The notes under the pieces were generated by a model. The model was given only the letters and a program-made list of their open reading frames with translations. It was not told where the DNA came from and searched no databases. Both the position numbers and the translations under genes were made by a program. 33,755 nucleotides of DNA from Basidiobolus meristosporus CBS 931.73 (lineage: Eukaryota > Fungi > Basidiobolomycota): assembly GCA_002104905.1 (NCBI GenBank), contig MCFE01000814.1:1-33755 (forward strand), in the 5' to 3' direction. Below are positions 1 to 30,776 of the stretch, in pieces (the stretch's first letter is position 1; every line of letters begins with the position of its first letter).

Positions 1-165
1 TACGCGGGCGAGGAGAAAGCGTATACAGCACTATCAGCAGTATAGGGTTAGGGTAATTTTGTATCTGCATCAAAAAGCCTACACACGATAATGGTCTTTG
101 GATGAAGCAAGTCAAACACCACAAAAAACAACACGACGAAAGATGAGAAGAAAAGGCAACCAAAA

Positions 166-236
166 TGCATACTCGGGGAATCGAACCCCGGTCTACCGCG
201 TGGCAGGCGGTAATTATACCACTAAACCAAGTATGC
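166..236 (-). tRNA. tRNA-Gly(GCC)
   Basis: Reverse complement GCATACTTGG...GTTCGATTCCCCGAGTATGCA folds as a cloverleaf; anticodon arm ACCGC-CT-GCC-AC-GCGGT; followed by T4. Confidence 0.95.
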
Positions 237-456
237 CGTACAGTAAATGATTTAGGGGTAAAAGTATACTATCATCTATGTTATACTGCATATTCATCCA
301 AGTCACGTTATACATTGAATTTAATAAACGGGAATTTTCTCAAAAGTCAGCAAGGATATATCAGCCAACAGAACATATTCCTGACTTCTCAGCACAGCAA
401 CACATCACATAGACTACAGATGCCACAACAGCAGTATCAAAAATAAAAAGATTATA

Positions 457-529
457 CGAGCATACCAGGGATCGAACCTGGAATCTCCTGATCCGTAGTC
501 AGGCGCCTTATCCATTTGGCCATACGCCC
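457..529 (-). tRNA. tRNA-Arg(ACG)
   Basis: GGGCGTA/TATGCTC acceptor stem, anticodon arm CCTGA-CT-ACG-GA-TCAGG, GTTCGA T-loop. Confidence 0.95.
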
Positions 530-773
530 GTTATTGACAGTTCTAAAGGCATACCGTTAATGAACATGAATGAAAAAACTAGGAAGTTTTGTTTTTGCCT
601 AATGGGAATCAACATATCTCATTCACATTGAGGAAAATGAATGGTTTATAGCTTATAGCTTATACCCTTGGGAATTTCAAAGTGAGTAAGGTTTGCTAGG
701 CCTTCACATTAGTGAGCTCAACAAGGTACGGCTATATAAAATAGATGGAATATCTTGATAAGTAAAAGTAGTG

Positions 774-845
774 TTCCGCATCGGGGAATCGAACCCCGGC
801 CTTCTCGGTGAGAGCGAGAGATCCTGACCACTGGACCAATGCGGA
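774..845 (-). tRNA. tRNA-Glu(CTC)
   Basis: TCCGCAT/ATGCGGA acceptor stem, anticodon arm TCTCG-CT-CTC-AC-CGAGA, GTTCGATTC. Confidence 0.95.
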
Positions 846-1214
846 GGAACACATAAGCTTAATAAGCAGGATACCTCTCTTACCTTACCCACTAAATAAT
901 GATTGAGTGATTGTGCGATTAAATCCAAACTCGACCACCGATTGATGGCTATTTAGTACGAGACTCTTGGCCGGTTTCTTTTCAATGTATGAGTTACAAA
1001 GATTTTATGCTGAAGTATGGTTGAGAAGTGTAATACTCTGTCGCCCAAAGTCTACTTTTGGATGGAAATACTAAATGGTAGATGCTGATATGTATGTGCA
1101 AACAAGCGCATTTATTTATCGAGGCAATTTCATTAGAATGCTTTTTATGACTACCAACCGATCTAACTATGGCCATTAATTCAACAAGATCAAGCTAATA
1201 AAACTACAAAAATG

Positions 1215-1286
1215 CTCTCGGACCGGGAATTGAACCCGGGTCTCCCGCGTGACAGGCGGGGATACTTACCACTATACTATCCGAGA
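1215..1286 (-). tRNA. tRNA-Asp(GTC)
   Basis: TCTCGGA/TCCGAGA acceptor stem, anticodon arm CCCGC-CT-GTC-AC-GCGGG, GTTCAATTC. Confidence 0.95.
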
Positions 1287-1780
1287 ATCTCAGAATCAAC
1301 GAAAAGAGACATATTAGCCACAGTTTAGAAACACAGGATCGAGCGGAGATGCTGGCCACGATTGCATGCCAAAAGGCCTTAACCGACATTGATAAGAACC
1401 TCCACGGAGACTCCTTTGTAAGGAATACAACACAATCCCGAAATGAAGTACCCGTAACTATACTATCCAAGACTAGCTTGTCTTGGACGAGGCTAGAGTG
1501 GATTACTGATAACCTTCTCCTTTCGCATGATCATTAGTGTTTTTGGGCGCACACAAACGAGGACGCATTCTTGTATATACCACGCCAGGGTGTCACTGCA
1601 ATACATTCGATGCTACAGGCCATTTCACAAGACAGGTGAGCTCTTTTTGAGACAAGTCAGTTCCATAAAAAAGTAACAAGGCCGGGCTACTTTTTGGTCA
1701 TGATTTTTCTAATCAAAATAACGCATTAATACTGGCCACTAGGCATTATAAGATGGTGGCTATTGGGTGTAAAAATTATT

Positions 1781-1854
1781 TGCTCACAGCAGGGGTCGAA
1801 CCTGCGACCTTGGCGTTATTAGCACCACGCTCTAACCAACTGAGCTATGCGAGC
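1781..1854 (-). tRNA. tRNA-Ile(AAT)
   Basis: GCTCGCA/TGTGAGC acceptor stem, D-arm TAGCTCAGTTGGTTAGAGC, anticodon arm TGGTG-CT-AAT-AA-CGCCA. Confidence 0.95.
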
Positions 1855-2185
1855 TTATTGATCTTTGGTGGTAGTACTGTCATTATAACTCGAATATTCT
1901 ACCCTTGCTAACTGTTGTTAAATGCATCATTGCATCGAAACGAGCCAATTTTGCTTTCCAAACTAACAAACCCAATAATAATATCAAAAGGAAGATGATC
2001 TGAACGCTAATCATCATAAAATACCAATCTCTTGCAAATCAAACTGATGTCCCAAGCCTAACTTGAGTACTACGGGTAAACATGTATACACCCTTCAAAA
2101 TGGTCGGGCTCACTTAGTGGCGAGTACCTTGAATAAGAATCAAAATTCTATTTTGAAAATGTCGAGCGTACAAAACAAAAATCAG

Positions 2186-2257
2186 TGAGGAGTGCGTGAT
2201 TTGAACACGCAACCTTTCGCTCTGGAGGCGAACGCGCTACCGTTGCGCCAACCCCCC
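2186..2257 (-). tRNA. tRNA-Trp(CCA)
   Basis: GGGGGGT/ACTCCTC acceptor stem, anticodon arm TTCGC-CT-CCA-GA-GCGAA, GTTCAAATC. Confidence 0.93.
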
Positions 2258-2644
2258 ACTTCTTGAGTGTTAGGTATTTATAGGTGGACTGATAGATAAA
2301 GAGAGCAAAGAAGAGTTAGGTAGACAGCCTCACTGCTGACTATACGTATAAATCTGCCTTAGCCGTAAATACCATAAACGCTGAGCTGTAAATTACTCCG
2401 AAATGTATTTGAAGTCCATGGTATTTGGTCACATTTTATATTCCTTCTGTATCTGCATTGATATACATTCAGTATCAAGTAAACATAACGGCTATATTTT
2501 TCCTGGGACGCCAAAGTGCATACCCCTTTCTTCCAGCCCCTTGTAACTCAATCATAATGGATATTGCCAATATTCCCCAACAGAACGGTAAAACAAGAAT
2601 TATTGTTGAATCATATACCATTAATGCTAACCCTATCCAACAAT

Positions 2645-2718
2645 GTCTTCGTGGTGTAGTTGGTTATCACGTCTGTCTAACACACAGACGGTCCTCGGTT
2701 CGAATCCGAGCGAAGACA
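2645..2718 (+). tRNA. tRNA-Val(AAC)
   Basis: GTCTTCG/CGAAGAC acceptor stem, anticodon arm TCTGT-CT-AAC-AC-ACAGA, T6 terminator just downstream. Confidence 0.95.
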
Positions 2719-3116
2719 TAACTTTTTTCACCAGCAAGCGTGCTACCCCAGTGACTATACTCAAAGTAGCATTATTATTATTATTACCGCTGTATAGTAT
2801 CGTAGTACCGGTGGTGATGGTTAGCAACAGCGAACCACTCCTCCAGAGTGGCACCTGGAGTGATCTCACGGTACACATCCTACATTGATTCGACCTGAAT
2901 TTACACCCATAGTAAACAGACAGAGATATTGAGTGGGTGGTGCAGAAGAAGGGTTGCTATCACCGAACCATGCTCAAGGGACAAGTGCGACGACCATAAT
3001 GAGTCCATATAGAGCAGGCGTTTCTATTAGCATTGTCAAGGGGATTAATATGGTTGTCTGATTGTTGTTTCTTTGATTGTTTTGAAGAGAAGAATAGTGC
3101 TAGTGAAGCCCCAAAA

Positions 3117-3306
3117 GGGCTCGGCGTCACCTAGAGGTAGTGCAATACTAGGGACACCTGTGGGCAGACAAGTGTGCAAGCAGGGACTTATCACCCGATG
3201 TTCAAAAATAAGTTTAATATCGAACTGGACTATGTCCAGTGTTTCAGATATTAAGCTGAAAAGAACAGATACTACACTTGATCTTAGCCAAAAGGCCTGA
3301 GAGGAT
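3117..3306 (-). ncRNA. U2: U2 spliceosomal snRNA (copy 1)
   Basis: Begins ATCCTCTCAGGCCTTTTGGCTAAGATCAAGTGTAGTATCTGTTCTT (U2 5' end with branch-pairing GTAGTA); Sm site AACTTATTTTTGAA; stem-loop IV loop ATTGCAC. 3' end approximate. Confidence 0.95.
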
Positions 3307-3710
3307 TGTAAGGATCTCCGGTGACATGGCGACTTTATTTATACTTACCAATGTTGCATGGGAAGCGGTTTAAATTATCAACGCTTTTTGAATTTTTATT
3401 CATAGTTTCGTATGTAGAACTGTGGTGTGGACCACATGTGTGTAGTTTTGCATTGGATCGAAGATTGACCTTAGAAAGCGTGAAATCATGGAATTATTAG
3501 CACATATGTATATTGGATAGCCCTTGAATCGGATTAAATTGGCAGATGGCCTATGGTAGAGTAGTGAGATGGGATGGGATTGTTTGGAATATCCTTAATG
3601 TGAAGATGGTAACGAACCAAGGCCAGAGCCATATAGGAGGGTGGATGTTTCGACACACACTCCAGAGTGCAGGCTATCATAAACAATTGATGGCTGCGAA
3701 GCAAAAGAAA

Positions 3711-3758
3711 GGGCTCAACCGGGAATTGAACCCGGGACCTCTCCCACCCTAAGAGAGA
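3711..3758 (-). pseudogene. 5'-truncated tRNA-Pro(AGG) in the palindrome spacer
   Basis: Reverse complement TCTCTC-TT-AGG-GT-GGGAG-AGGTCCCGGGTTCAATTCCCGGTTGAGCCC gives the anticodon arm, T arm and 3' acceptor strand; D arm and 5' acceptor strand are replaced by the inverted arm. Confidence 0.9.
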
Positions 3759-4110
3759 GCCATCAATTGTTTATGATAGCCATGCACTCTGGAGTGTGTG
3801 TCGAAACATCCACCCTCCTATATGGCTCTGGCCTTGGTTCGTTACCATCTTCACATTAAGGATATTCCAAACAATCCCATCCCATCTCACTACTCTACCA
3901 TAGGCCATCTGCCAATTTAATCCGATTCAAGGGCTATCCAATATACATATGTGCTAATAATTCCATGATTTCACGCTTTCTAAGGTCAATCTTCGATCCA
4001 ATGCAAAACTACACACATGTGGTCCACACCACAGTTCTACATACGAAACTATGAATAAAAATTCAAAAAGCGTTGATAATTTAAACCGCTTCCCATGCAA
4101 CATTGGTAAG

Positions 4111-4118
4111 TATAAATA
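4111..4118 (+). promoter_or_regulatory. TATA box upstream of U2 (also at 3336-3343 minus and 15621-15628 plus)
   Basis: TATAAATA starts 37 nt before the U2 +1 and is present in all three copies. Confidence 0.6.
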
Positions 4119-4147
4119 AAGTCGCCATGTCACCGGAGATCCTTACA

Positions 4148-4337
4148 ATCCTCTCAGGCCTTTTGGCTAAGATCAAGTGTAGTATCTGTTCTTTTCAGCT
4201 TAATATCTGAAACACTGGACATAGTCCAGTTCGATATTAAACTTATTTTTGAACATCGGGTGATAAGTCCCTGCTTGCACACTTGTCTGCCCACAGGTGT
4301 CCCTAGTATTGCACTACCTCTAGGTGACGCCGAGCCC
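4148..4337 (+). ncRNA. U2: U2 spliceosomal snRNA (copy 2)
   Basis: Mirror of copy 1; same conserved 5' end, Sm site and loop IV. Confidence 0.95.
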
Positions 4338-4735
4338 TTTTGGGGCTTCACTAGCACTATTCTTCTCTTCAAAACAATCAAAGAAACAACAATCAGACAA
4401 CCATATTAATCCCCTTGACAATGCTAATAGAAACGCCTGCTCTATATGGACTCATTATGGTCGTCGCACTTGTCCCTTGAGCATGGTTCGGTGATAGCAA
4501 CCCTTCTTCTGCACCACCCACTCAATATCTCTGTCTGTTTACTATGGGTGTAAATTCAGGTCGAATCAATGTAGGATGTGTACCGTGAGATCACTCCAGG
4601 TGCCACTCTGGAGGAGTGGTTCGCTGTTGCCAACCATCACCACCGGTACTACGATACTATACAGCGGTAATAATAATAATAATGCTACTTTGAGTATAGT
4701 CACTGGGGTAGCACGCTTGCTGGTGAAAAAAGTTA

Positions 4736-4809
4736 TGTCTTCGCTCGGATTCGAACCGAGGACCGTCTGTGTGTTAGACAGACGTGATAACCAACTACAC
4801 CACGAAGAC
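4736..4809 (-). tRNA. tRNA-Val(AAC), palindrome copy
   Basis: Mirror of 2645-2718. Confidence 0.95.
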
Positions 4810-5196
4810 ATTGTTGGATAGGGTTAGCATTAATGGTATATGATTCAACAATAATTCTTGTTTTACCGTTCTGTTGGGGAATATTGGCAATATCCATTAT
4901 GATTGAGTTACAAGGGGCTGGAAGAAAGGGGTATGCACTTTGGCGTCCCAGGAAAAATATAGCCGTTATGTTTACTTGATACTGAATGTATATCAATGCA
5001 GATACAGAAGGAATATAAAATGTGACCAAATACCATGGACTTCAAATACATTTCGGAGTAATTTACAGCTCAGCGTTTATGGTATTTACGGCTAAGGCAG
5101 ATTTATACGTATAGTCAGCAGTGAGGCTGTCTACCTAACTCTTCTTTGCTCTCTTTATCTATCAGTCCACCTATAAATACCTAACACTCAAGAAGT

Positions 5197-5268
5197 GGGG
5201 GGTTGGCGCAACGGTAGCGCGTTCGCCTCCAGAGCGAAAGGTTGCGTGTTCAAATCACGCACTCCTCA
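5197..5268 (+). tRNA. tRNA-Trp(CCA), palindrome copy
   Basis: Mirror of 2186-2257. Confidence 0.93.
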
Positions 5269-5599
5269 CTGATTTTTGTTTTGTACGCTCGACATTTTCA
5301 AAATAGAATTTTGATTCTTATTCAAGGTACTCGCCACTAAGTGAGCCCGACCATTTTGAAGGGTGTATACATGTTTACCCGTAGTACTCAAGTTAGGCTT
5401 GGGACATCAGTTTGATTTGCAAGAGATTGGTATTTTATGATGATTAGCGTTCAGATCATCTTCCTTTTGATATTATTATTGGGTTTGTTAGTTTGGAAAG
5501 CAAAATTGGCTCGTTTCGATGCAACGATGCATTTAACAACAGTTAGCAAGGGTAGAATATTCGAGTTATAATGACAGTACTACCACCAAAGATCAATAA

Positions 5600-5673
5600 G
5601 CTCGCATAGCTCAGTTGGTTAGAGCGTGGTGCTAATAACGCCAAGGTCGCAGGTTCGACCCCTGCTGTGAGCA
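5600..5673 (+). tRNA. tRNA-Ile(AAT), palindrome copy
   Basis: Mirror of 1781-1854. Confidence 0.95.
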
Positions 5674-6167
5674 AATAATTTTTACACCCAATAGCCACCA
5701 TCTTATAATGCCTAGTGGCCAGTATTAATGCGTTATTTTGATTAGAAAAATCATGACCAAAAAGTAGCCCGGCCTTGTTACTTTTTTATGGAACTGACTT
5801 GTCGCAAAAAGAGCTCACCTGTCTTGTGAAATGGCCTGTAGCATCGAATGTATTGCAGTGACACCCTGGCGTGGTATATACAAGAATGCGTCCTCGTTTG
5901 TGTGCGCCCAAAAACACTAATGATCATGCGAAAGGAGAAGGTTATCAGTAATCCACTCTAGCCTCGTCCAAGACAAGCTAGTCTTGGATAGTATAGTTAC
6001 GGGTACTTCATTTCGGGATTGTGTTGTATTCCTTACAAAGGAGTCTCCGTGGAGGTTCTTATCAATGTCGGTTAAGGCCTTTTGGCATGCAATCGTGGCC
6101 AGCATCTCCGCTCGATCCTGTGTTTCTAAACTGTGGCTAATATGTCTCTTTTCGTTGATTCTGAGAT

Positions 6168-6239
6168 TCTCGGATAGTATAGTGGTAAGTATCCCCGCCT
6201 GTCACGCGGGAGACCCGGGTTCAATTCCCGGTCCGAGAG
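6168..6239 (+). tRNA. tRNA-Asp(GTC), palindrome copy
   Basis: Mirror of 1215-1286. Confidence 0.95.
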
Positions 6240-6608
6240 CATTTTTGTAGTTTTATTAGCTTGATCTTGTTGAATTAATGGCCATAGTTAGATCGGTTGG
6301 TAGTCATAAAAAGCATTCTAATGAAATTGCCTCGATAAATAAATGCGCTTGTTTGCACATACATATCAGCATCTACCATTTAGTATTTCCATCCAAAAGT
6401 AGACTTTGGGCGACAGAGTATTACACTTCTCAACCATACTTCAGCATAAAATCTTTGTAACTCATACATTGAAAAGAAACCGGCCAAGAGTCTCGTACTA
6501 AATAGCCATCAATCGGTGGTCGAGTTTGGATTTAATCGCACAATCACTCAATCATTATTTAGTGGGTAAGGTAAGAGAGGTATCCTGCTTATTAAGCTTA
6601 TGTGTTCC

Positions 6609-6680
6609 TCCGCATTGGTCCAGTGGTCAGGATCTCTCGCTCTCACCGAGAAGGCCGGGGTTCGATTCCCCGATGCGGAA
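6609..6680 (+). tRNA. tRNA-Glu(CTC), palindrome copy
   Basis: Mirror of 774-845. Confidence 0.95.
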
Positions 6681-6918
6681 CACTACTTTTACTTATCAAG
6701 ATATTCCATCTATTTTATATAGCCGTACCTTGTTGAGCTCACTAATGTGAAGGCCTAGCAAACCTTACTCACTTTGAAATTCCCAAGGGTATAAGCTATA
6801 TAACCATTCATTTTCCTCAATGTGAATGAGATATGTTGATTCCCATTAGGCAAAAACAAAACTTCCTAGTTTTTTCATTCATGTTCATTAACGGTATGCC
6901 TTTAGAACTGTCAATAAC

Positions 6919-6991
6919 GGGCGTATGGCCAAATGGATAAGGCGCCTGACTACGGATCAGGAGATTCCAGGTTCGATCCCTGGTATGCTCG
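6919..6991 (+). tRNA. tRNA-Arg(ACG), palindrome copy
   Basis: Mirror of 457-529. Confidence 0.95.
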
Positions 6992-7211
6992 TATAATCTT
7001 TTTATTTTTGATACTGCTGTTGTGGCATCTGTAGTCTATGTGATGTGTTGCTGTGCTGAGAAGTCAGGAATATGTTCTGTTGGCTGATATATCCTTGCTG
7101 ACTTTTGAGAAAATTCCCGTTTATTAAATTCAATGTATAACGTGACTTGGATGAATATGCAGTATAACATAGATGATAGTATACTTTTACCCCTAAATCA
7201 TTTACTGTACG

Positions 7212-7254
7212 GCATACTTGGTTTAGTGGTATAATTACCGCCTGCCACGCGGTA
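7212..7254 (+). pseudogene. 3'-truncated tRNA-Gly(GCC) at the outer end of the right arm
   Basis: Matches the intact copy through ...CTGCCACGCGGTA, then reads TCCGGTACAC instead of GACCGGGGTTCG; the T arm (B box) is lost. Confidence 0.9.
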
Positions 7255-7521
7255 TCCGGTACACAATATAAATTACCGAAGTACAACAGAATAAAGGCTA
7301 CTCTAATTTACTCTGGGAATTTTTGGCACCCATTCCAGCCGGATGTTCTATATTGAAGTCGTATTAGAGAATACCATGCTTGGTTATTTATATGGTAGAT
7401 TCCGGTTGAATGCCTTGGCCACATCACCTATCTAGCGCTTAGTGTATCATTCACGATACTTCATTTCTTTCCTGCACCATGTCAGATTTGGGTGTATCGG
7501 CTTGAAATAGGGATGTGAACT

Positions 7522-8613
7522 TTGCCCTACATTGCAGGTCACTGGTATGCTTCTTGTTATGGTACAGTATTTACTGGATACAGCTTGGTTGGTAGAGCAG
7601 AAGACTGTAGTGCTAACATGGTTCTGTGGTATTTATGCTACCTAGAGTGTCACAGCAGTTGCACTTCATACAAGAGCAGGGTGTCATCATGTCTGGCTTG
7701 GATGACTTTGATATGCCATAATACTAGTTCCTCGAACATAAGTGGCATTTTTTGGGGTAGTGGTATGAGAGAGACGTATAAATATAATGGCTTTGGTCTA
7801 GACACAAGAATATACAGTATTCCTCAACTATTCAAAGACCACCTACCTCTCATCAAGGTTGCGACAATGAAAATTTCCGAATTTTTTGATAAAAACTGGC
7901 GGCTCACGGGTCTGTGGACGGTGTCCAGTATTGGCCCAAATAGTATTACTGGATCACGATTGAGCTATGATGATGAGTTCCTAGGCGAACAAGCCCTGTA
8001 TAAAATGGAGCCGTGGTGGCCAGTATATGATCATATAGAGCGAGGTTGGGAAGAAATAACACCTCCTCGCACACCCTTGGCTAGGTATGTTGCCATTGAA
8101 CATGGACAAACACTTGAAGGCTATTTTGATTATTGGCCTCTGGGTCAGTTAGAATCAGTTCCTGCATATATAGCTGAGTATGTACCCTATCATACCCCCA
8201 TTGTGAAAGTATGTGCTTATCACCTTGCTGGAGGGCAAGTCATAAAGCAGGGCCTTACCATGCAAGAGCCTTCTGTGTCCTATCTGATGGACACTGATGG
8301 ATTGACCACGCGAGCATATCGGACTGATTCCTATGAAGGTTCTTACCCATTATTTGGGTGTTATACGTTTGAGCAATCTCGTGGGCAATATTGGCTCTGG
8401 TGGCCAGATACTGGAAGGCAAATAGCACTTGGGCTCATCAGACTACATGAGGCAAAACAACAGCTTACAGTTCATTTAGATGGGCTACCAGCAGTGTTGG
8501 CTACGCACCCGTGGGCTTTGAAGGGCTCGGCAACTGATGAATACATGGGTGTTGGGATGTCTCAGACTAGATTTAGGACAGCTCTTGAAAACCCTAGGTG
8601 TGTTACTGAGTAG
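7522..8613 (+). CDS. Intronless orphan ORF, 363 codons, unknown product
   Basis: 1092 nt without a stop in moderately AT-rich DNA. ORF-track start is TTG; first ATG is codon 33. No family recognised. Confidence 0.5.
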   Translation: MPYIAGHWYASCYGTVFTGYSLVGRAEDCSANMVLWYLCYLECHSSCTSYKSRVSSCLAWMTLICHNTSSSNISGIFWGSGMRETYKYNGFGLDTRIYSIPQLFKDHLPLIKVATMKISEFFDKNWRLTGLWTVSSIGPNSITGSRLSYDDEFLGEQALYKMEPWWPVYDHIERGWEEITPPRTPLARYVAIEHGQTLEGYFDYWPLGQLESVPAYIAEYVPYHTPIVKVCAYHLAGGQVIKQGLTMQEPSVSYLMDTDGLTTRAYRTDSYEGSYPLFGCYTFEQSRGQYWLWWPDTGRQIALGLIRLHEAKQQLTVHLDGLPAVLATHPWALKGSATDEYMGVGMSQTRFRTALENPRCVTE

Positions 8614-8994
8614 CTGTATTGTTGGATTGTGTAACTACAACTTGTGTATTGCTATAGCTGATAAGCACTGAATCTGTCTTAAAACACCAACCTCAACCAG
8701 GCTTTTACTTAACTGAGAATTCTATAGTGGACAATAATAATATGCATAAAAAATGTAGGCAATGCAGTTTTCTTTTGGAGGTTGGAGACAGCTCATCAGT
8801 TGCAAATATGCTGCCTAATGTCTAATTAAATACATACTTGGTAATAGCTCTTTGTAACTGTTATATTGACTTTCATCAACCTTGACTTACTTTCTTACTG
8901 TACACTTCAACTCTTATTGAAATGAGGCTCTCAATGTTAAAGCACATCAAAATAGTTCCTGGCTTTTCCCACAGCCCTCTGGAGCTCTCTTGAG

Positions 8995-9247
8995 TGTTGA
9001 AAATTTGTAGTTGCACCTAGGTATTTCCTTAGCTTAGTCACATGGATCACAGTCAACATATATTAGAGAATTCTTATCAAATTCCTTTTTGGGATTTACT
9101 TGCATAGTTATGACTAAGATTTTAGACACCCAGAACATGAAAAAATGCTCAGGTGCTCAAACAGCCCCTCGTATTGCATAGATGCTTTGGGACTTTCCTA
9201 ATCATATTCTACATGTTTTCTTACCAAAATCATGTAAATGTATAAAT
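8995..9247 (+). mobile_element. Degenerate LTR, 5' part, interrupted at its TATA box
   Basis: TGTTGAAAATTTGTAG... aligns loosely with the LTR (TTAGAGAAT, CCCAGAACATGAAAA, ACAGCCCC, GGGAC.TTCCTA) and stops at TATAAAT. Confidence 0.7.
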
Positions 9248-9597
9248 TGTTGTAAAAGTTTGTAATTCCACCTAAATATTCACCTAACTTGGTCACCTAG
9301 ATCATTACCTTCAAATCCTAGAGAATACTGACCAAATTCCTTGTTGGGATTTAGTTAGAATATTTTCACCAACATACCAGATACCCAGAACATGAAAATT
9401 CTCAAAGTTTGTCCTAACAGCCCCATGCTTTGCACACATGCTCTTGGGACCTTCCTAAACTTATTCTATGTGTTTGGTATGCCAAGACCTTGTAAAAGTA
9501 TAAATACTACTTTTACATTCAATATATCATTAAGTGAAAACCACATAATCTACTTGTTCTTCCAATCACTTCCAGTATCTCCAAGACTCTTACAACA
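9248..9597 (+). repeat. 5' LTR (350 bp)
   Basis: TGTTGTAA...TTACAACA terminal inverted repeat; internal TATAAATA at 9499-9506. Confidence 0.92.
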
Positions 9598-9609
9598 GGT
9601 CATGAGCCC
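9598..9609 (+). other. Primer-binding site, half-tRNA-iMet type
   Basis: GGTCATGAGCCC directly after the LTR, resembling the GGTTATG(A/G)GCCC PBS of Ty5/copia, which pairs with the iMet anticodon arm. Confidence 0.8.
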
Positions 9610-9628
9610 CAAGCTGCCACTTTTTGCA

Positions 9629-12600
9629 ATGTCTACTACTGCTATTACTGGAACTTTTTCCTCTGCTGAAAAGTTGGATGGATCTAACTACTAAGTGTTG
9701 AAGGTGAAGATGAGGATTCTGCTACAAGAAAGAGGCCTTTGGGATTTTGTCATGGGAGAAGAATGCCCTCATTAAGACATGGGAGAGGAAGCCTTAAAGT
9801 ACTAGAAGAAAGAACAAAGTGCCTTCAACTGCATTTGCCTTAATGTTAAAGACAAATTGCTAATTCAATGCTCAAGAGCAAAAACAGCAAAGAATGCCTT
9901 CCAGGCATTAGAAGACACCTACCAGTCATGTTCAGCTGCTAAGAAAATGTATCTGAGACAAAAACTCTTTACTACAAAGATGCAGCCAAGAGAAGAAATG
10001 GAACATCCAATTAACAGAGTTACCCTGCTGGTAGATGAGATGGAATCTGTGGGCATACCAACTACTGATGAGGATATGATAGTAATCATCCTGAATAGCC
10101 TGACAGACAAGTTTTAGGGCCTTGTATCAGCCCTAGAGTCCAGAACTGAAGATTTGATCTTAAATTATGTATATGGAAGGCTCCTGGATGAAGAATTAAG
10201 GAAATCAAGTGCCAACAAGAAGGAAGAAGAAAATGCTTTAATAAGCAATGATAACCAACAAAGGAGGTACCTAAGACCTTACAAAGGTAACAGCAACCTG
10301 TTTTGCAACTACTGCAAATGTAAAGGACACACATCAGACTGGTGTCTCACAAAGAGATATAATCAGTAAAAGAAGCCTGCTTATGGAAATGCTGCAATAA
10401 CTGAAGATAGACTATTCATAACTGAACTGAAAATGACCACATAAATGGATTCTCAGACACAGTACATTGACCCTGGAGCATCTTAACACTTTACACACCA
10501 AAAAGAACTTTTTACTCAATATCAAGAAATTCCAATTAAGAAGGTTTTCATGGGTGACAATAGAACACTTGATGCAGTGGGAGAAGGAACTATCCAAGTA
10601 AACTTAGAAGCAGTGAAGGAAGCCATACACTGACCTTTAAAGAAGTACTCTATATACCAGAAATAGCCAAGAACCCTACTATCTCTAAGCAAGGCCACAG
10701 CAGAAGGACTCAGTTTCAGCTTTGACAATTCTGGATGCAAGATCACTGATCAAAATGGTGCCCATATTGCTTTGGGTATCAGAGATCAGAATATATATAA
10801 GTTGACTTATATTCCATCATATCTGAAAGCCAATATAAGTAACTTAAATGAAGAAGCACCAATGCTTTGGCACAGGAGATATGGGCACATCAATTTTGAT
10901 TATTTGCGCAAAATTTTCAAAGATCAGCTAATTTCCGGAGTAAAAATTGATCCCCCAGCTAATTTGAAGCACTGCAAAGCCTGTATATATGGGAAACAAG
11001 CCAGGCAATTGTTCAAGAGCTCTGGGTTAATCAAAACTAAGAAAAAATTCAGATCTGATTCACTCAGATATGTGTGGACCTATGCAAAATTTATCTGGCA
11101 GGATGAAGTATTTAATCACTTTTATTGATGATTATACAAGATACACATGGGTCTACTTTCATGGAGAGAAAGGAAGAAGCTCTGTCTAAGCTCAGGGAGT
11201 TTAAAGCCATGGTGGAGAGAGAAACTGGTGAAAAAATCAAGAAAATATGCTCTGATAATAGTGGAGAATATACCTCAAAACTCTTCATCCACTTCTGCAA
11301 AATTCATGGGATAAAGCAAGAGACTACTGTACCATACTTCACACAGCAAAATGGAGTAGCAGAACATGCAAACAGATCAATAATTGACATTGCAAGATCT
11401 ATGATTCATGATCAAAAAATTATCTGATGATTTTTGGGTAGAATTCAGTTGCCGCAGCTGTATACCTTAAAAATAGGAGTTATAACAGAATACTTTGTGC
11501 TTCTACTCCATTTGAAGCATGGCATGGATACAGACCAAGTGCAGAGCATCTAAGAATATTTGGGTGTACAGCTTATGCCAAGATACTGATTGGAAATCAG
11601 TCATATTTGAGCCAAAAAGTGTAAAATGCATATTTTTGGGCTACTGCAAGGAGAGTAAAGCATACAGACTCTACAAAACAAAAGAAAAGAAGCTAATCAT
11701 GTCCAGGGATGCATTGCTTGATGAATATTCAAAATTTTTGCAAAAAATGACATCAGATGATGACCAAAATCTGATCTCAACTCCACCACTTGTCAGAATT
11801 GAATCAGTGCCAAACAGTGAGATTTTTTTCACTCTAGAGAGCTCCACAACCATGGTTTGGCCTGGATCAGTGCCTAGGAATATCCTAGAAGAGATCATTC
11901 CAGTATCAAATGCCTGGAGATCCAACTGGACAAGTAAGAGCGCAAATTACTGTATTGATGAGGATACAAACTTAGCCTGTGCCTATTCAGTCCATATTCA
12001 TGAGCCCCAGACTGTAAAAGAGGCCCTAAATAGCCCTCAGACAAGGTTTAGGAGATCTGTAATGACTGAGGAATATCAGGCCCTGATGGAAAAGCAAACT
12101 TGGGTCTTGTTCAGATTGCCAATCAACCCAAAATCAATTGGATGCAGATGGGTCTTCAAGACAAAATACAAGGTTGATGGTACAGTTGAAAGATTCAAAA
12201 CAAGACTTGTGGCCAAAGGATACTCTCAGACAAAAGGACGTGACTATACTGAGATCTTTGCACTGGTAGCCAAGTTTTATTCCATCATATTAATATTGGC
12301 TATTGCAGCCAAATATAGTTTTTATACAACAAATGGATGTAAAAACTGCATTTTTGAATGGAGCACTTGATGAGGACATGTATATGGACCAGCTTGATGG
12401 GTTTCCTGACCAAGATAACCCCCATTTGGTCTGCAAGCTTAAAAAGTCTCCATATGGTCTCAAACAATCACAAAGAGCCTGGAATTGCACAATAGATTCT
12501 TATTTGTAATCTTGGAGTTGCAAAAGGAGTAATACTGACTATAGTATATACTATAAGCCAGATAGAGCAAATCCAGTTCTATTAGCTCTATATATGGATG

Positions 12601-13571
12601 ACCTAATTATAGCTGCCAATAACCTAGCAACATTAGAAGAGACTAAATCCAGCCTATCTAAGGAGTTCAAGATGTCTGATCTAGGAGAACTCAGTTACTA
12701 CTTAGGGATTGAGTTTTCCATAGACAGAAGCACCCAGACTATCACCCTAAGCCAGTCCAAGTATAATCAAGATATACTAAAGATGTACCATATGAAAGAC
12801 TGTAAACCAGCAGCTACCCTAATGGGGACAAACCTTAACTTGGTCAAAACTTAACCAAATCAAGAGAGCTTGGTGCCATCTGAAAGCCCTGACTTTCCTT
12901 ATCAATCTATGGTTGGCAGTCTGATGCATATCATGCTTGGAACACGTCCAGATATCTCATATTCAGTGGGAGTTGTCAGCCAGCATAATCAGAACTATGG
13001 ATCTGATCATATTGTAACTGTTAAGCAGATTTTTAGATACCTAAAAGGAGCTGCTGATATCTGCTTAAGATACACTTGTAAGGATTCAGAACAGGATCTT
13101 GTGGGATACTCTGATGCTGATTGGGGACAAAATTTGGAAGACAGAAGATCCACCACAGGATACACCTTTCTTTACTGTAAAGGAGCAATTTCATGGAACT
13201 CAAGAAAGCAACCAACTGTAGCACTTTCTTCCACAGAGGCAGAGTATATGGCATCCTGTGAAGCTACAAAATAAGCAATGTGGTTAAGAAAGCTTTTGAT
13301 AGATTTAGGCCTATGTTAAAAAATGCCTATTTCTTTATTTCCAGATAATCAAGGATGCATAGAATTAGGTAGATATCCAACTTTTCATGCTAGAACTAAG
13401 CACATAGATATCAGACATCATTTCATATGTGAAGCTATAGAGAATAACCTTGTTAATTTAGTTCACTGACTTACAGATTAAATGATTACAGGTATATTTA
13501 CCAAACCATTTGCTAGTGACAAGTTTGAATATCTTAGGTCAAAATTAGGACTGGTCAGCATGAATATTTAG
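9629..13571 (+). pseudogene. copia gag-pol pseudogene with many stops and frameshifts
   Basis: Gag LDGSNY*; zinc knuckle CNYCKCKGHTSDWC; protease IDPGAS*H; LWHRRYGH and CKACIYGK; integrase SDNSGEY and QNGVAEHANR; RT GCRWVFK, RLVAKGYSQ, QMDVKTAFLNG, YMDDLII; RNase H GYSDADWG and STEAEY. Confidence 0.95.
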
Positions 13572-13582
13572 TGGAGTGGGAA
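13570..13582 (+). other. Polypurine tract
   Basis: AGTGGAGTGGGAA immediately before the 3' LTR TGTTG. Confidence 0.8.
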
Positions 13583-13929
13583 TGTTGTAAAGATTTATAA
13601 TTCCACCTAAATATTCACTTGACTTAGTCACTGAGATCATTACCTTCAAATCCTAGAGAATACTGGCCAAATTCCTTGTTGGCATTTACTTGGAATATTT
13701 CACCAAAATATCAGACACCCAGAACATGAAAATTAGATAGGTTGTCTAAACAGCCCCAAACTTTACACACATGCTCTTGGGACCTTCCTAAGCCTATTCT
13801 ATGTGTTTACTTTGTCAAGACCATTTAAAATATAAGTGTTGCTTATACTTTCAAAAAATCATTAAGTGAAAACCACATAATCTACTTGTTCTCCAAATCA
13901 CTTCCAATATCTCCAGAACCCCTGCAACA
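13583..13929 (+). repeat. 3' LTR (347 bp)
   Basis: TGTTGTAAAG...CTGCAACA; about 85% identical to the 5' LTR by hand count. Confidence 0.9.
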
Positions 13930-14080
13930 ATTTTCATGTTCTGTGTACCTAATATTTTGCTGAAAATATTCCAAGTAAATTCCAGCAAGGAATTTGGTCA
14001 GTTTCTCTAAGATTTGTAGGTAATGATCTAAGTTACTAAGTTAGGTGAATATTTAGGTGGAATTAAAAAATTTTACAACA
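13930..14080 (-). mobile_element. Inverted 5' half of an LTR
   Basis: Reverse complement begins TGTTGTAAAA...CCACCTAAATATTCACCTAAC and ends at AGAACATGAAAAT, abutting the 3' LTR. Confidence 0.88.
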
Positions 14081-14139
14081 AAAACCACAATCTACTTGTT
14101 CTCCTAATCACTGTCAATATCTCCAAGACTCTTACAACA
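14081..14139 (+). mobile_element. LTR 3' tail fragment
   Basis: AAAACCACAATCTACTTGTTCT...CTCCAAGACTCTTACAACA matches the LTR end. Confidence 0.85.
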
Positions 14140-14149
14140 GTATGTCTCA

Positions 14150-14330
14150 GAAATTCTGTCCAAATTTCTTGTTTGGATATACTTTAAGTATTTCAATAAA
14201 GTCTCAGGTAACCTGGACATGGAGAATCTCAGAGCAGTCTAGTGATGTCAAAGCACTCCTCACATGCTCTTGGGACCTTTCAAGACTTACTCTACATGTT
14301 TGTTTTGTCAAGACTATGTAAACCCTTTGA
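14150..14330 (+). mobile_element. Heavily degenerate LTR fragment
   Basis: CCAAATTTCTTGTT and CACATGCTCTTGGGACCTT...GTCAAGAC match the LTR interior; boundaries approximate. Confidence 0.6.
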
Positions 14331-14468
14331 AAAGTTGCAAACTTGATATTCATCTGATAATCTGCTAGTATTCTACTGGTATTCTAACAGTATTTTGCTG
14401 GCATTCAGCTGGTGTTTTTTCTTTGAATCCTTAGTTACAATTTTTGGCAGAAGTAGTCACTGGATAAT

Positions 14469-14800
14469 TGTTGTAAAAATTTGTATTTCCACCTAAATAT
14501 TCACCTAACTTAGTCACTTGGATCATCACCTTCAAATCCTAGAGAATACTGACCAAATTCCTTGTCGGGATTTACTTAGAATATTTACCCAGAACATGAA
14601 AATTAGATAAGTTGTCCAAACAGCCCCAAACTTTGCACACATGTTCTTGGGACCTTCCTTAACCTATTCTACGTGTTTGTAATGCCAAGACCAGGTAAAA
14701 GTATAAATACCACTTTTACATTCAATAAATCATTAAGTGAAAAACACATAATCTACTTGTTCTCCAAATCACTTCCAATATCTCCAAGACTCTTACAACA
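14469..14800 (+). mobile_element. Solo LTR with 5-bp target-site duplication ATAAT
   Basis: TGTTGTAAAA...TTACAACA flanked by ATAAT at 14464-14468 and 14801-14805; carries a small internal deletion relative to the 5' LTR. Confidence 0.93.
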
Positions 14801-15149
14801 ATAATTACCAAGCTTAGTATGAGCACTGGTTGGCCTAGTCTCATACTGAAAAATATGTCTGCTTGTCTGCCAAATAGCTAGTACCTAAGATATTGAGAGT
14901 TTTCAGCTCTGAGCAACTTGGAATTCAGCTGGTATTATTATAGTGTTCTGCCAGCCTTATCTTGGTTTTTTCTCTAAGGGATAGTTTAGACAATTCATTA
15001 CATTCAACATATAATGAAGTAAAGTCTACCTACTCCATTTGCTTGCACAATGACTTCTAATATCTCCAAAACTCTTACAACTATATTTACTTGTTACTTT
15101 AATGGGCCCAGATTTGGCAGATATATTTCTAGGGAAGCTTTGGTCATTA

Positions 15150-15345
15150 TGAAACCTAAAGAGTGCATTTGCCAGTAGTTAGGCTATTGCAGTAAATCTA
15201 AGACCTGTACTTTGCATATTGTCAAAGTAAAGCAATTGATAAGCTGGGTTATCTTGCCTGAATAATATTTAAAGGTTTTATGAAAATGGCACCAGATAAT
15301 GCTAAAAATCTGATCTCAAGCCCACTGGCAGTCCAGATGGAATTG
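15150..15345 (+). pseudogene. Second, older copia pol relic (region downstream of integrase)
   Basis: Translates KPKECI..LGYCSKSK and NLISSPLAVQME, homologous to EPKSVKCIFLGYCKESK and NLISTPPLVRIE of the main element. Confidence 0.6.
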
Positions 15346-15504
15346 GAGCAAGATAATTAAATGAAGAAGCACCAATGTTGGACTTGGAAGATTCTATTGT
15401 AGCTTTTGTAAGTTGACCTAAGTACTCCACTAATTTGGTCACCGGAACTATAGCCCAAGAACCTTGGAGTGTCTGGCCCAAGTTCTTTGTTAGGATCAAT
15501 ATTT

Positions 15505-16036
15505 GATCCAATGCAAAACTACACACATGTGGTCCACACCACAGTTCTACATATGTAACTATGAATAAAAATTCAAAAAGCGTTGATAATTTAAGCCGCT
15601 TCCCATGCAACATTGGTAAGTATAAATAAAGTCGCCATGTCACCGGAGATCCTTACAATCCTCTCAGGCCTTTTGGCTAAGATCAAGTGTAGTATCTGTT
15701 CTTTTCAGCTTAATATCTGAAACACTGGACATAGTCCAGTTCGATATTAAACTTATTTTTGAACATCGGGTGATAAGTCCCTGCTTGCACACTTGTCTGC
15801 CCACAGGTGTCCCTAGTATTGCACTACCTCTAGGTGACGCCGAGCCCTTTTGGGGCTTCACTAGCACTATTCTTCTCTTCAAAACAATCAAAGAAACAAC
15901 AATCAGACAACCATATTAATCCCCTTGACAATGCTAATAGAAACGCCTGCTCTATATGGACTCATTATGGTCGTCGCACTTGTCCCTTGAGCATGGTTCG
16001 GTGATAGCAACCCTTCTTCTGCACCACCCACTCAAT
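15505..16036 (+). repeat. ~530-bp dispersed copy of the U2 locus (matches 3995-4526)
   Basis: Constant offset 11510; three substitutions seen, all upstream of U2. Confidence 0.95.
15658..15847 (+). ncRNA. U2: U2 spliceosomal snRNA (copy 3)
   Basis: Same sequence as copy 2, with TATA retained. Confidence 0.95.
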
Positions 16037-16229
16037 CCCTCAGCCCACTTGCTCGGGACAAAGTTCAACCTCATTGTATTACCTAACAACATGAAATGCT
16101 ACTTTATTTTGAGGCTTTTACATACAAGAATTCGAACTATAAAAGCATGAATTCAGACAGGATGGGTAAAATAGAGGGGAGATATGGAGAAGTATGGGGA
16201 AGTATGGATTCAATAAACTATTGATTAAA

Positions 16230-16264
16230 TTTAAACCTAAGTTTAAACCTAAATTTAAACCCTA
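16230..16264. repeat. 12-bp tandem repeat x3 (TTTAAACCTAAR)
   Basis: TTTAAACCTAAG TTTAAACCTAAA TTTAAACCCTA. Confidence 0.7.
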
Positions 16265-16367
16265 TAGAGCCTACATTCAAAAAGTGTGGATTCGTATGGA
16301 ATGGCTACATTGGAAGATTTGAAATTATGTACGAGGAAGGATTGTTTGGAAGAGACGATTATTTCGA

Positions 16368-19300: not shown

Positions 19301-19499
19301 CCAGTGAAAGGATCATACTCAAGGTCGAATTTCCCACGAAGCAAAGCAGCAAGCTGGGGGAAAGCTCATGAATAAGAGTCTTCGTCACTAAGTCGGCAAA
19401 TGTTGACCTTACCTGTCCTTGGGGTTGGTTTTTTGCCTTTGGTTGAAAGATGCCAGCCTTGCTAGAAGCTGGCATATCATCAGGATTGTAACGAGACAT
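16368..19499 (-). CDS. Pumilio/PUF RNA-binding protein (Pum/Puf3 class), spliced
   Basis: Eight PUF repeats in 16508..18517 with recognition triads S..Q, N..Q, C..Q, N..Q, C..Q, N..Q, S..E, N..Q, as in Pumilio. Upstream exons join in frame from ATG 19499 (RSSSAPP, DLIQD|DFPRTPSPV). A terminal intron 16548-16475 gives ...VEKLV...EEH* at 16368. Exon ends are hand-inferred. Confidence 0.93.
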
Positions 19500-20190
19500 C
19501 ACGCAGTTTTCCGTGTCTCAAATATCAAAATTAGGGGTTTTCGTCTACCCTCCAAAGTTTCCACAGAGAGTATGCTACCTTTCGGGTTATCAAAGTACCA
19601 GAAAGACCAGGTTTTTACGTTACCAAGTAGAGTCTACAAGTATGCAGGATCTATGGACAGAACTATTTGTACAGATTTACACCACTAAAGTACAAGGGTA
19701 CAAGAATGCACAAGAGGAACTAACGGTTTAGAGCAAAGATGAAGCGAGTGTAAGGCTAATGATGAGTGCAAAAACGCTTACTAGCCAACGTGGTGGGATA
19801 GAGGGTCTCAGCAAGTTCAATTAGAAATATTGGCCCCCCGAGGGAAGTTTACGGGGAAATTTTTGTTGCTTATGATTTCATGTTTCTTTTTTTAACTAGG
19901 GCATCAAGTTCGCTTAATTCTCAGCCTGTTTTCGGCTTATTTACTGATTAAATAATGGTTGTCTGATTAGATGCACCAGCTGAAAAAAATCTTCTGGTCA
20001 TTTGTTGTCTATTGTCCATGGCCAATCAGCAGCGAGACCGGATATTTAGCTAATGTGACAATTGATGGCCAATATGTTTCAATGAATGAAACTTTAATCA
20101 CACGCTTAATAGTTTCATGCTGTGTGAGCTATATATATTTATGTATTATCATCATTATCATCATCATCGAGCATCACTACTGTGGCAGAC

Positions 20191-20523
20191 ATGGCCCAAC
20201 TTACGATCTCCGTTTTCCTTATCCTTGCTATTCTTGAACACGTGCTCTGCGCGCGACCATATCCAAGGTACATGAATCCCTACTATGGTCCATGGAGACG
20301 TTACTCCTATGGTGAATACTGGCGGCCGCCTAGGATGTACAGAAATGCTGCAAAGCGACGTTCGGGTGGAGCGAATACACTCAGTCAAGTTAATGCTAGG
20401 TTGGCTGGTCTACTACAAGAGGGGGATAACATTATGTATATCCCACAAATGCCATCTCAAAACTATCGGAAATCACCAGCTAACGTTATGGTTACCCGAG
20501 GCAGATATTTCCAGGAATTTTAA
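20191..20523 (+). CDS. Small secreted protein candidate, 110 aa
   Basis: Hydrophobic N-terminus MAQLTISVFLILAILEHVLCA, then an R/Y/P/W-rich segment ending KRR; single exon. Confidence 0.55.
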   Translation: MAQLTISVFLILAILEHVLCARPYPRYMNPYYGPWRRYSYGEYWRPPRMYRNAAKRRSGGANTLSQVNARLAGLLQEGDNIMYIPQMPSQNYRKSPANVMVTRGRYFQEF

Positions 20524-21028
20524 ACATTATGGAAAGCCCAAGCAGATGCATGGATTCAGGAGTGTAGGTCAGAGCGTCATTTACATTGAATAAGCAGATA
20601 GATGAGCAAATAGGTATTAATTATAGGTAACGATTTTGGTTATTGATGTTCGATATCAATAATTTACGGGCAAGGGGCTTTGATCCAATCAAGTCACCCT
20701 TAGCATAGGGATTTTAAGATGTTGATTATTACAAAGCAAGCTGGAATTCTGCAAAGCGGTAGTGAAGCTTTGAATGGACCAACTGCTGTATCTAACATAT
20801 ACCTTGCTGCCATAGTGAGCCTCGATTCCTTGCTTGTAACTTTTCTTTGTAAAGTAATAACTAGACAGTTAGGCTTCCACCCTGTTTTGTCGTAGGTGAC
20901 TGACCCTACTCTTGTTCCAATAAGTAAATTTCTTTCCACTTCCGACAAAGAAAGTGTTGTTACATCTCCTGTATTATTGTTTCTTTTTTACCCCACTTTG
21001 ACGAACATTCCCACTATTGCATTACCCC

Positions 21029-24952: not shown

Positions 24953-25004
24953 GGGGTCATGCAAGCCCCTTCTTTGCCCTTCGCCTTTCACCCTTCACGC
25001 CACT

Positions 25005-30740: not shown

Positions 30741-30776
30741 ACATCCACCTTGCCAATCATTCCTCCTCTTTTTACA

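What the first reader, a model, noticed from the sequence alone, without database searches (positions are those of the whole stretch)
194..7254. 7-kb near-perfect palindrome doubling the tRNA/U2 island
Seen: ~3.5-kb arms around a 62-bp spacer. This duplicates six intact tRNA genes and U2 (plus a Gly fragment) and puts two U2 promoters head to head. Known: long palindromes with tiny spacers are normally unstable (cruciform or hairpin cleavage) and arise by fold-back repair. Inference: either a recent fold-back amplification raising tRNA/U2 dosage, or a maintained structure whose read-through would give kilobase dsRNA. Caveat: whole-genome amplification (MDA) chimeras and long-read fold-back artefacts give the same geometry.
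Basis: partly seen in the sequence, partly recalled or inferred. Interest (0 to 1): 0.8.

Follow-up and report, generated by a model that had tools for sequence, protein, structure and literature searches.

The report
Contig-end mirror repeat of tRNA genes
The 7-kb mirror-image repeat of tRNA and U2 genes is really in the deposited sequence, but it forms the last stretch of a small duplicate contig whose sister contig shows the same locus unfolded, so it is more likely a long-read assembly fold-back than a true chromosome structure.

Summary
The arms are 194-3695 and 3758-7254 around a 62-bp spacer. They are about 99.86% identical (3 substitutions, 2 indels). Each arm carries six tRNA genes plus U2.

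The context changes the reading. The window is the whole contig MCFE01000814.1 (33,755 bp) of Basidiobolus meristosporus CBS 931.73, so the left arm plus 193 bp is the contig's terminal 3.7 kb. A sister locus lies on the 345-kb contig MCFE01000001.1. It has an intact tRNA-Pro preceded by six more tRNA genes, and it is collinear with the right arm and the DNA to its right. Only junction J1 (3757/3758) is non-native. The outer boundary (7254/7255) is simply where two different cassette versions differ. Neither arm can be a copy of the other.

Three small differences cluster within about 75 bp of J1. Earlier scan notes, which I did not check, report near-identical tRNA cassettes elsewhere in this genome and similar suspect flipped copies on other contigs.

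My verdict is about 60% assembly fold-back tail and about 30% real hairpin-mediated inverted duplication, which is a known kind. The kilobase-dsRNA idea fails on geometry. Raw reads or one long-range PCR would settle it.

The parts
1..193 (.). Contig-end flank unique to the left copy. It includes the last 28 nt of tRNA-Gly and a TAGGGTTAGGGT motif at 43-56.
   Evidence: No other copy exists in the window or in L003. The contig starts at base 1.
166..236 (-). Intact tRNA-Gly(GCC)
   Evidence: ARAGORN and Rfam, 65.6 bits
194..3695 (.). Left arm. It carries Arg 456-530(-), Glu 773-845(-), Asp 1214-1286(-), Ile 1781-1854(-), Trp 2185-2257(-), Val 2644-2719(+) and U2 3115-3308(-).
   Evidence: It has a private substitution at 2823 relative to both the right arm and L003.
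3696..3757 (-). Spacer: tRNA-Pro(AGG) positions 27 to the 3' end (3711-3757) plus the T-run terminator (3696-3710). It is natively contiguous with the left arm.
   Evidence: It aligns to the intact tRNA-Pro of L003 (8415-8487) except for G>A at 3754 and a C3 vs C4 run near 3712.
3757..3758 (.). J1, the only non-native junction. tRNA-Pro position 26/27 is joined to the inverted sequence that starts 16 nt past the tRNA's 3' end, with 1 nt of microhomology.
3758..7254 (.). Right arm, the resident copy. It carries U2 4146-4339(+), Val 4735-4810(-), Trp 5197-5269(+), Ile 5600-5673(+), Asp 6168-6240(+), Glu 6609-6681(+), Arg 6918-6992(+) and the Gly fragment 7212-7254(+).
   Evidence: 3758-5153 is collinear with L003 8503-9897, with 0 substitutions and 1 indel.
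7254..7255 (.). J2, the outer end of symmetry. tRNA-Gly position 44 is joined to old array DNA. It is not an inverted junction.
   Evidence: Cassette-to-downstream adjacency in the same orientation is also present on the sister contig.
5154..8006 (.). 2,853-bp segment absent from the sister contig. It is a clean deletion there with no microhomology, and it truncates the ORF.
7385..7640 (+). Relic of another array unit: the Leu-Tyr spacer plus a decayed tRNA-Tyr, 75-80% identical to L003 6671-6985.
15485..16036 (+). Third U2 unit, 98.55% identical to the arm copies and convergent with the PUF gene. This is the conserved position.
   Evidence: B. ranarum L002 has U2 in the same position.

Best explanation
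The palindrome is most likely an assembly product. Contig MCFE01000814.1 is a small second copy (allele or recent duplicate) of an internal region of the 345-kb contig MCFE01000001.1. Its true sequence is the right arm and everything to its right. Natively that sequence would continue leftward through an intact tRNA-Pro into Ala, Lys, Asn and further genes, as on the sister contig. Instead, the terminal read or reads at the contig's left end was a fold-back chimera. It derived from another, more complete copy of the same tRNA/U2 cassette, one with an intact tRNA-Gly. That strand turned back inside tRNA-Pro, leaving a 62-nt loop. The assembler attached it through the 3.5 kb of near-identical cassette sequence. 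Shown: the contig-end position, the unfolded sister locus, the single non-native junction, and the fact that neither arm can be a copy of the other. Inferred: that J1 exists only in one or a few reads.
For: (1) The window is the entire contig. P0123 lies on a 33,755-bp contig, L004 covers MCFE01000814.1 from base 1, and L004 is byte-identical to window 1-18613. The left arm plus 193 bp is therefore the contig's terminal 3,695 bp. (2) The sister locus L003 on MCFE01000001.1 has Thr, Leu, Tyr, Asn, Lys, Ala, an intact tRNA-Pro-AGG, U2 and Val. It then runs into the DNA that matches window 8007-18957. The right arm is collinear with it, and only J1 is non-native. (3) The left arm carries an intact tRNA-Gly and flank, while the right arm carries Gly(1-43) joined to array DNA. 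The symmetry therefore ends where two pre-existing cassette versions differ, not at a repair junction. (4) Three small differences from the sister contig lie within about 75 bp of J1: 3754 G>A, a C-run length difference near 3712, and a 1-nt insertion at 3782. The rest of the inner arm shows 1 difference in 1.4 kb. Two of the three are 1-nt indels, as expected where few long reads support a consensus. (5) The assembly is PacBio-based. Long-read fold-back reads are documented and can tangle assemblies (PMC12870357). (6) Earlier scan notes, not checked here, report near-identical multi-tRNA cassettes on other contigs and a flipped copy or mirrored contig end judged probable artefacts.
Against: The spacer is genomic and asymmetric. 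It is not a SMRTbell adapter, so the simple missed-adapter artefact is excluded. The same paper found virtually no fold-backs in modern PacBio HiFi data. The arms differ by substitutions, 2 of 3 at CpG sites (P about 0.012), plus a 7-bp repeat slip. Both arms are therefore well-polished real sequences rather than one noisy read. A cluster of changes next to a junction is also what mutagenic break repair would leave. Real inverted duplications seem common in this genome according to earlier notes. No reads were available, so support for J1 was not measured.
Confidence: 0.6

Rival explanations
1. This is a real, heritable hairpin-mediated inverted duplication. A break or stalled fork inside tRNA-Pro of a complete cassette copy left a 3' end that folded back 62 nt and copied its own strand. 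The inverted copy was then resolved by homologous recombination within the 3.5-kb cassette into the truncated cassette at this locus. This matches the yeast class in which fold-back inverted duplications end in a repeat and are resolved by a secondary translocation.
For: The asymmetric single-copy genomic spacer and minimal microhomology match sequenced fold-back junctions (PMC3907307; PMC6134005). J1 lies in a tRNA gene, a known replication pause site (PMC6358216; bioRxiv 10.1101/2020.01.29.925644). The arms are two distinct, clean sequences with CpG-type differences. The mutation cluster around J1 fits error-prone repair. Every base left of J2 is cassette repeat, so a contig break about 7 kb from the unique anchor is also expected for a real structure.
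Against: It sits at a contig end, with only 193 bp beyond the arm. The sister contig is unfolded. It has only 1 nt of microhomology, whereas 2-8 bp is typical in the human series. It needs two in-vivo steps that an assembler performs automatically. There is no independent assembly or read evidence.
Confidence: 0.3
2. One replicative event made both junctions. A fork stalled at tRNA-Pro, the nascent strand switched to the opposite strand and copied 3.5 kb, then it stalled again at tRNA-Gly and switched to the downstream DNA (FoSTeS/MMBIR with both breakpoints at anticodon-arm edges).
For: Both boundaries fall inside tRNA genes, at positions 26/27 of Pro and 44/45 of Gly. The chance of both lying in tRNA genes is about 0.02.
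Against: The sister contig has the cassette joined to the same downstream DNA in the same orientation, without any inverted copy. The right arm is therefore resident, and J2 pre-dates or is independent of the inversion. J2 is not an inverted junction and there is no third copy.
Confidence: 0.05
3. This is a maintained functional palindrome that raises tRNA/U2 dosage or produces long hairpin RNA. The arms would be kept identical by gene conversion.
For: The arm segment shows 0 substitutions against the sister contig, while neighbouring DNA differs by 0.34-1.45%. That could reflect homogenisation. CpG content in the arms is preserved (o/e 0.78).
Against: The divergent U2 genes give identical, not complementary, RNAs. 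The centre-directed tRNA-Val genes terminate at T6. The genome reportedly has many copies of such cassettes, so the dosage gain would be marginal. Homogenisation among three near-identical assembly copies can equally be a polishing effect. There is no conservation evidence.
Confidence: 0.03

Closest known systems
Long-read fold-back or chimeric-read artefacts carried into contig ends (PMC12870357; WGA palindromes, bioRxiv 10.1101/173872)
   Same: A near-perfect palindrome that forms the tail of a contig. An unfolded version of the locus exists in the same assembly. Consensus-type differences are concentrated at the turn.
   Different: The centre is a 62-bp asymmetric genomic loop, not an adapter or a zero-gap turn. 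The arms carry real substitution differences. No WGA is known for this culture.
Hairpin (fold-back) mediated inverted duplications: yeast GCRs (PMC6134005) and human inv-dup-del (PMC3907307)
   Same: A single-copy spacer native to one arm, little microhomology, and an inverted copy that ends within repeated DNA and continues into another locus.
   Different: The spacer is 62 bp against a median of about 3.4 kb in the human series. The arms are only 3.5 kb. Microhomology is 1 nt. It is unverified in DNA.
ODIRA (origin-dependent inverted-repeat amplification; PMC11790251, PMC10766186)
   Same: A strand switch between short inverted repeats a few tens of bp apart, giving an inverted junction with a small loop.
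   Different: ODIRA gives an inverted triplication with two inverted junctions. Here there is one inverted junction and no third direct copy on the contig.
Tandem multi-tRNA gene cassettes (Entamoeba, Xenopus, fission-yeast centromeres; and, per earlier scan notes, this genome)
   Same: The unit seen here (Thr, Leu, Tyr, Asn, Lys, Ala, Pro, U2, Val, Trp, Ile, Asp, Glu, Arg, Gly) has one gene per amino acid, is densely packed, and is followed by a decayed relic of the next unit.
   Different: This copy includes a U2 gene and is truncated. I did not see the tandem copies myself.

Membership tests
Long-read assembly fold-back artefact | The palindrome lies at a contig end | tested here: met
   The window is the whole of MCFE01000814.1. 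The left arm ends 193 bp from base 1.
Long-read assembly fold-back artefact | An alternative, unfolded path for the same locus exists | tested here: met
   L003 on MCFE01000001.1 has an intact tRNA-Pro and upstream tRNA genes, and is collinear with the right arm.
Long-read assembly fold-back artefact | The junction is supported by one or very few (near-symmetric) reads | not testable with these tools
   No reads are available. The only indirect hint is the cluster of 3 small differences within about 75 bp of J1.
Long-read assembly fold-back artefact | Adapter or zero-gap centre (missed SMRTbell adapter type) | tested here: not met
   The 62-bp centre is tRNA-Pro 3' part plus terminator, matching L003 at 60 of 62 positions.
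Hairpin-mediated (fold-back) inverted duplication | Inverted arms separated by a single-copy spacer that is native to one arm | tested here: met
Hairpin-mediated (fold-back) inverted duplication | Inverted microhomology (typically 2 bp or more) at the spacer/inverted-arm junction | tested here: not met
   Only 1 nt (T26 of tRNA-Pro) is shared.
Hairpin-mediated (fold-back) inverted duplication | The arms are mirror copies of one another up to a second repair junction | tested here: not met
   Symmetry ends where two pre-existing cassette versions differ: intact Gly plus flank against Gly(1-43) plus array DNA. The latter adjacency is shared in orientation with the sister contig.
Hairpin-mediated (fold-back) inverted duplication | Doubled read depth over the arms and native reads across both junctions | not testable with these tools
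   No reads available
ODIRA inverted triplication | Two inverted junctions flanking an inverted middle copy, with a third direct copy | tested here: not met
   The DNA after 7254 has no similarity to the arms or the left flank.
Gene-conversion-maintained palindrome (Y-chromosome type) | The palindrome is conserved in related strains or species, with arm identity above flank identity | not testable with these tools
   Only short B. ranarum contigs could be reached. They end inside U2.

The most novel reading that the evidence does not exclude
The palindrome is real and heritable. A fold-back began at the base of the anticodon stem of a tRNA gene inside a repeated tRNA/U2 cassette and was resolved by recombination into a paralogous cassette. 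That left a 7-kb palindrome with a 62-bp spacer, which has persisted long enough to gain CpG-type substitutions. It would be a natural, sequence-resolved example of tRNA-gene-triggered fold-back rearrangement and of tolerance for a long short-spacer palindrome in an early-diverging fungus.
Probability: 0.3. Interest if true: 0.45.

Novelty: not a real feature. Interest (0 to 1): 0.2.

Why it matters
If it is an artefact, the practical value is a warning. Contig-end palindromes in this PacBio assembly, which has many small near-duplicate contigs and repeated tRNA cassettes, should not be read as biology, and tRNA/U2 gene counts from it are inflated. If it is real, it would be a clean natural example of a known mechanism, a fold-back inverted duplication resolved through a repeat. 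It would be anchored at a tRNA gene, which ties replication pausing at Pol III genes to genome rearrangement outside yeast. It would also show that a 3.5-kb-arm palindrome with a 62-bp spacer can be carried stably.

Tried and rejected
(a) A TE insertion splitting a longer right arm. The missing 193 bp and the rest of tRNA-Gly occur nowhere else in the window.

(b) An ODIRA triplication. The second junction is not inverted.

(c) A missed SMRTbell adapter. The spacer is genomic.

(d) A two-switch replicative event making J1 and J2 together. The sister contig argues against it.

(e) Foreign or mobile DNA at J2, including a Helitron-like 5'-TC end. The native dinucleotide does not fit, and the DNA is a relic of the same tRNA array.

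(f) Independent assemblies through exact look-ups of junction-straddling ORFs and a long ORF. Nothing was on record.

(g) A word search, Pfam and the protein atlas for the 363-aa ORF. All were blank. Only the exhaustive search found the sister-contig copy.

(h) A metagenome scan for the tRNA-Pro segment. There were no hits.

(i) B. ranarum synteny. The contigs are too short and end inside U2.

(j) A resection-strand test on the arm substitutions. With 3 G>A changes on the plus strand there are too few to interpret.

I did not fetch the main contig beyond L003 on either side. Full nesting of contig 814 inside contig 1 is therefore inferred from 15 kb of collinearity and is not shown to the contig's right end.
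Full report
OBSERVATION. The inverted repeat exists exactly as described. The arms are 194-3695 and 3758-7254, separated by 62 bp. Base-by-base comparison gives 3 substitutions (1650, 1929, 2823). It also gives a complex 6-bp net indel in a TATAGCT tandem (646-653 vs 6801-6802) and a 1-nt insertion at 3782. All five differences are intergenic. ARAGORN and Rfam find tRNA-Arg, Glu, Asp, Ile, Trp and Val plus a full-length U2 (151 bits) in each arm. tRNA-Gly(GCC) is intact only at 166-236, and its first 43 nt are repeated at 7212-7254. The spacer is the 3' part of a tRNA-Pro(AGG) gene on the minus strand plus its T-run terminator. A third U2 unit of 552 bp, 98.55% identical, lies at 15485-16036.

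WHAT THE WINDOW IS. The flanking genes (Pumilio-family, CDC24, chitin synthase, M18 aminopeptidase, LTV) are fungal. The best Pumilio hits are Basidiobolus ranarum proteins at 86-90% identity. In B. ranarum a U2 gene also sits convergent with the Pumilio gene. The third U2 unit is therefore the conserved site.

The 363-codon ORF just right of the palindrome had no match by word search, Pfam or the protein atlas. The exhaustive search found one close relative, P0121, at 97% identity. P0121 is ORY08407.1 of B. meristosporus CBS 931.73, on the 345,098-bp contig MCFE01000001.1. Its cluster-mate P0123 lies on a contig of exactly 33,755 bp. Look-up of P0123 returned MCFE01000814.1 from base 1, and that locus is byte-identical to window 1-18613. 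The window is therefore a complete small contig of GCA_002104905.1. The left arm plus 193 bp is its terminal 3.7 kb. PMC7466969 describes this assembly as PacBio-based.

THE SISTER LOCUS. L003 (MCFE01000001.1:132719-153222, reversed) carries tRNA-Thr, Leu, Tyr, Asn, Lys and Ala. These are followed by an intact tRNA-Pro(AGG), then U2 and tRNA-Val. L003 8503-9897 equals the right arm 3758-5153 with no substitution and one indel. L003 then jumps to the equivalent of window 8007 and stays collinear through the TE block, the third U2 unit and the Pumilio gene to at least window 18957.

Over that stretch the two contigs differ by 94 substitutions and 15 one-to-three-base gaps in the 6.5-kb TE block. 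They differ by 14 substitutions and no gaps in 4.2 kb of genic DNA. These are two real biological copies (alleles or a recent duplicate), not a noisy duplicate. The 2,853 bp missing from L003 (window 5154-8006) is a clean deletion without microhomology. It truncates the ORF, so the window's state is the older one.

CONSEQUENCES FOR THE ANATOMY. The right arm and everything to its right is the resident sequence of this locus. The spacer is natively contiguous with the left arm. The only non-native junction is J1 (3757/3758). There, tRNA-Pro position 26/27 abuts the inverted sequence that starts 16 nt past the tRNA's 3' end, after the 15-nt terminator stretch, with 1 nt of microhomology.

The outer end of symmetry (J2, 7254/7255) is not an inverted junction. 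The DNA right of it (7385-7640) is a 75-80% identical relic of the Leu-Tyr spacer and a decayed tRNA-Tyr of the same kind of array. The left arm has an intact tRNA-Gly and flank that the right arm lacks. The right arm is joined to DNA that the left arm lacks. Neither arm can therefore be a copy of the other. The palindrome juxtaposes two different copies of one tRNA/U2 cassette in inverted orientation. Its extent is set by where those copies differ.

This removes the idea, also noted by the first stage in s1-239834, that both 'duplication breakpoints' arose in one event. The positions at the anticodon-arm edges are correct, but J2 is independent of the inversion.

REAL OR ARTEFACT. Both readings need a strand that turned back inside tRNA-Pro of a complete cassette copy, followed by a homology-based join into this locus. 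They differ only in whether that join happened in the cell or in the assembler.

For the artefact:
- The palindrome is at the contig end.
- The sister contig is unfolded.
- Three small differences from the sister contig lie within about 75 bp of J1: G>A at 3754, a C3 vs C4 run near 3712, and a 1-nt insertion at 3782. The rest of the inner arm has one difference in 1.4 kb. Two of the three are 1-nt indels. That pattern is expected where most native reads map better to the unfolded contig, leaving a thin consensus.
- Earlier scan notes, which I did not verify, describe near-identical 9- and 17-tRNA cassettes on other contigs. They also describe a flipped copy and a mirrored contig end judged probable artefacts. 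These supply a source for the left arm and a precedent.
- Fold-back reads are a documented long-read artefact (PMC12870357).

Against the artefact:
- The centre is a genomic asymmetric loop, not an adapter.
- Modern PacBio data show almost no fold-backs.
- Both arms are clean sequences. Two of their three substitutions are at CpG sites (P about 0.012).
- Clustered changes at a junction also fit error-prone repair.
- The structure matches the known yeast and human class of hairpin-mediated inverted duplications resolved through repeats. Its turn lies in a tRNA gene, a known replication pause site.

I put the assembly fold-back at about 0.6 and a real fold-back at about 0.3.

The two U2 genes do face away from each other across the centre, with 837 bp between their 5' ends. 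Read-through from divergent promoters in a palindrome gives two identical RNAs, not complementary ones. A hairpin RNA needs one transcript that crosses the centre. The only centre-directed genes are the tRNA-Val copies, each followed by TTTTTT. The single-stranded centre can fold strongly (-47 kcal/mol over 136 nt, z = -12.6), which only restates the palindrome. An ODIRA-type triplication is excluded on this contig. A dosage benefit is doubtful if cassettes are as numerous as earlier notes say.

LIMITS. No reads, no second assembly of this strain and no DNA-level search of fungal genomes were available. I saw 15 kb of collinearity with the main contig, not the full length. The tandem cassettes reported by earlier notes were not inspected. 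The contig is fungal, not human, and no restricted step arose.

Noticed in passing
window 9245-15484, compared with 1-7254 and 16500-33755: CpG observed/expected is 0.04 in the decayed copia-like element block (gag, integrase and RVT_2 fragments; about 350-bp LTR-like repeats at 9245, 13583 and 14466). It is 0.35 in 7255-9244 and 0.78-0.79 in the tRNA/U2 arms and the genic DNA. CpG loss is therefore extreme and confined to repeats, consistent with methylation-driven decay that spares the tRNA cassette.
   Followed up: partly
window 14801-18957 vs L003 16348-20504: The two sister contigs differ by 14 substitutions, all of them transitions, with no indels. In 11 of the 14 the small contig carries the A/T state. 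This may mean a C-to-T-biased process acts on one copy.
   Followed up: partly
window 7522-8613 (+): A 363-codon open frame (annotated as the 248-aa hypothetical protein P0123) has no relative in 1.8 billion representatives apart from its own sister-contig copy, which the 2,853-bp deletion truncates. Its 5' part overlaps a decayed tRNA-Tyr relic. It is an orphan gene or a chance-preserved frame.
   Followed up: partly
window 43-56: TAGGGTTAGGGT, two telomere-type repeat units, lies about 110 nt downstream of the intact tRNA-Gly and 42 nt from the contig end. Its orientation is the opposite of that expected for a left-end telomere. Its origin is unknown; it may be a relic of a telomere-tailed element described in earlier notes.
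   Followed up: no
window 15485-16036; L003 17032-17583; L002 4442-4564: A U2 gene convergent with the 3' end of the Pumilio (puf3-like) gene is conserved between B. meristosporus and B. ranarum. The B. ranarum contig breaks inside U2, which suggests U2 is multi-copy there too. The 552-bp U2 unit, including 170 bp upstream with a TATAAATA box and 187 bp downstream, is shared at 98.5% with the cassette copies.
   Followed up: partly
L003 6264-9554 plus window 4735-7254: Together the two contigs outline one cassette unit of 14 different tRNA genes (Thr, Leu, Tyr, Asn, Lys, Ala, Pro, Val, Trp, Ile, Asp, Glu, Arg, Gly) with a U2 gene embedded between Pro and Val. A decayed relic of the next unit follows it. 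It may be related to the 17-tRNA cassettes in earlier notes.
   Followed up: partly
L003 9897/9898 (window 5153 | 8007): The large contig carries a clean 2,853-bp deletion relative to the small contig. It removes five tRNA genes, the Gly fragment and the 5' part of the ORF, with no microhomology at the junction.
   Followed up: yes
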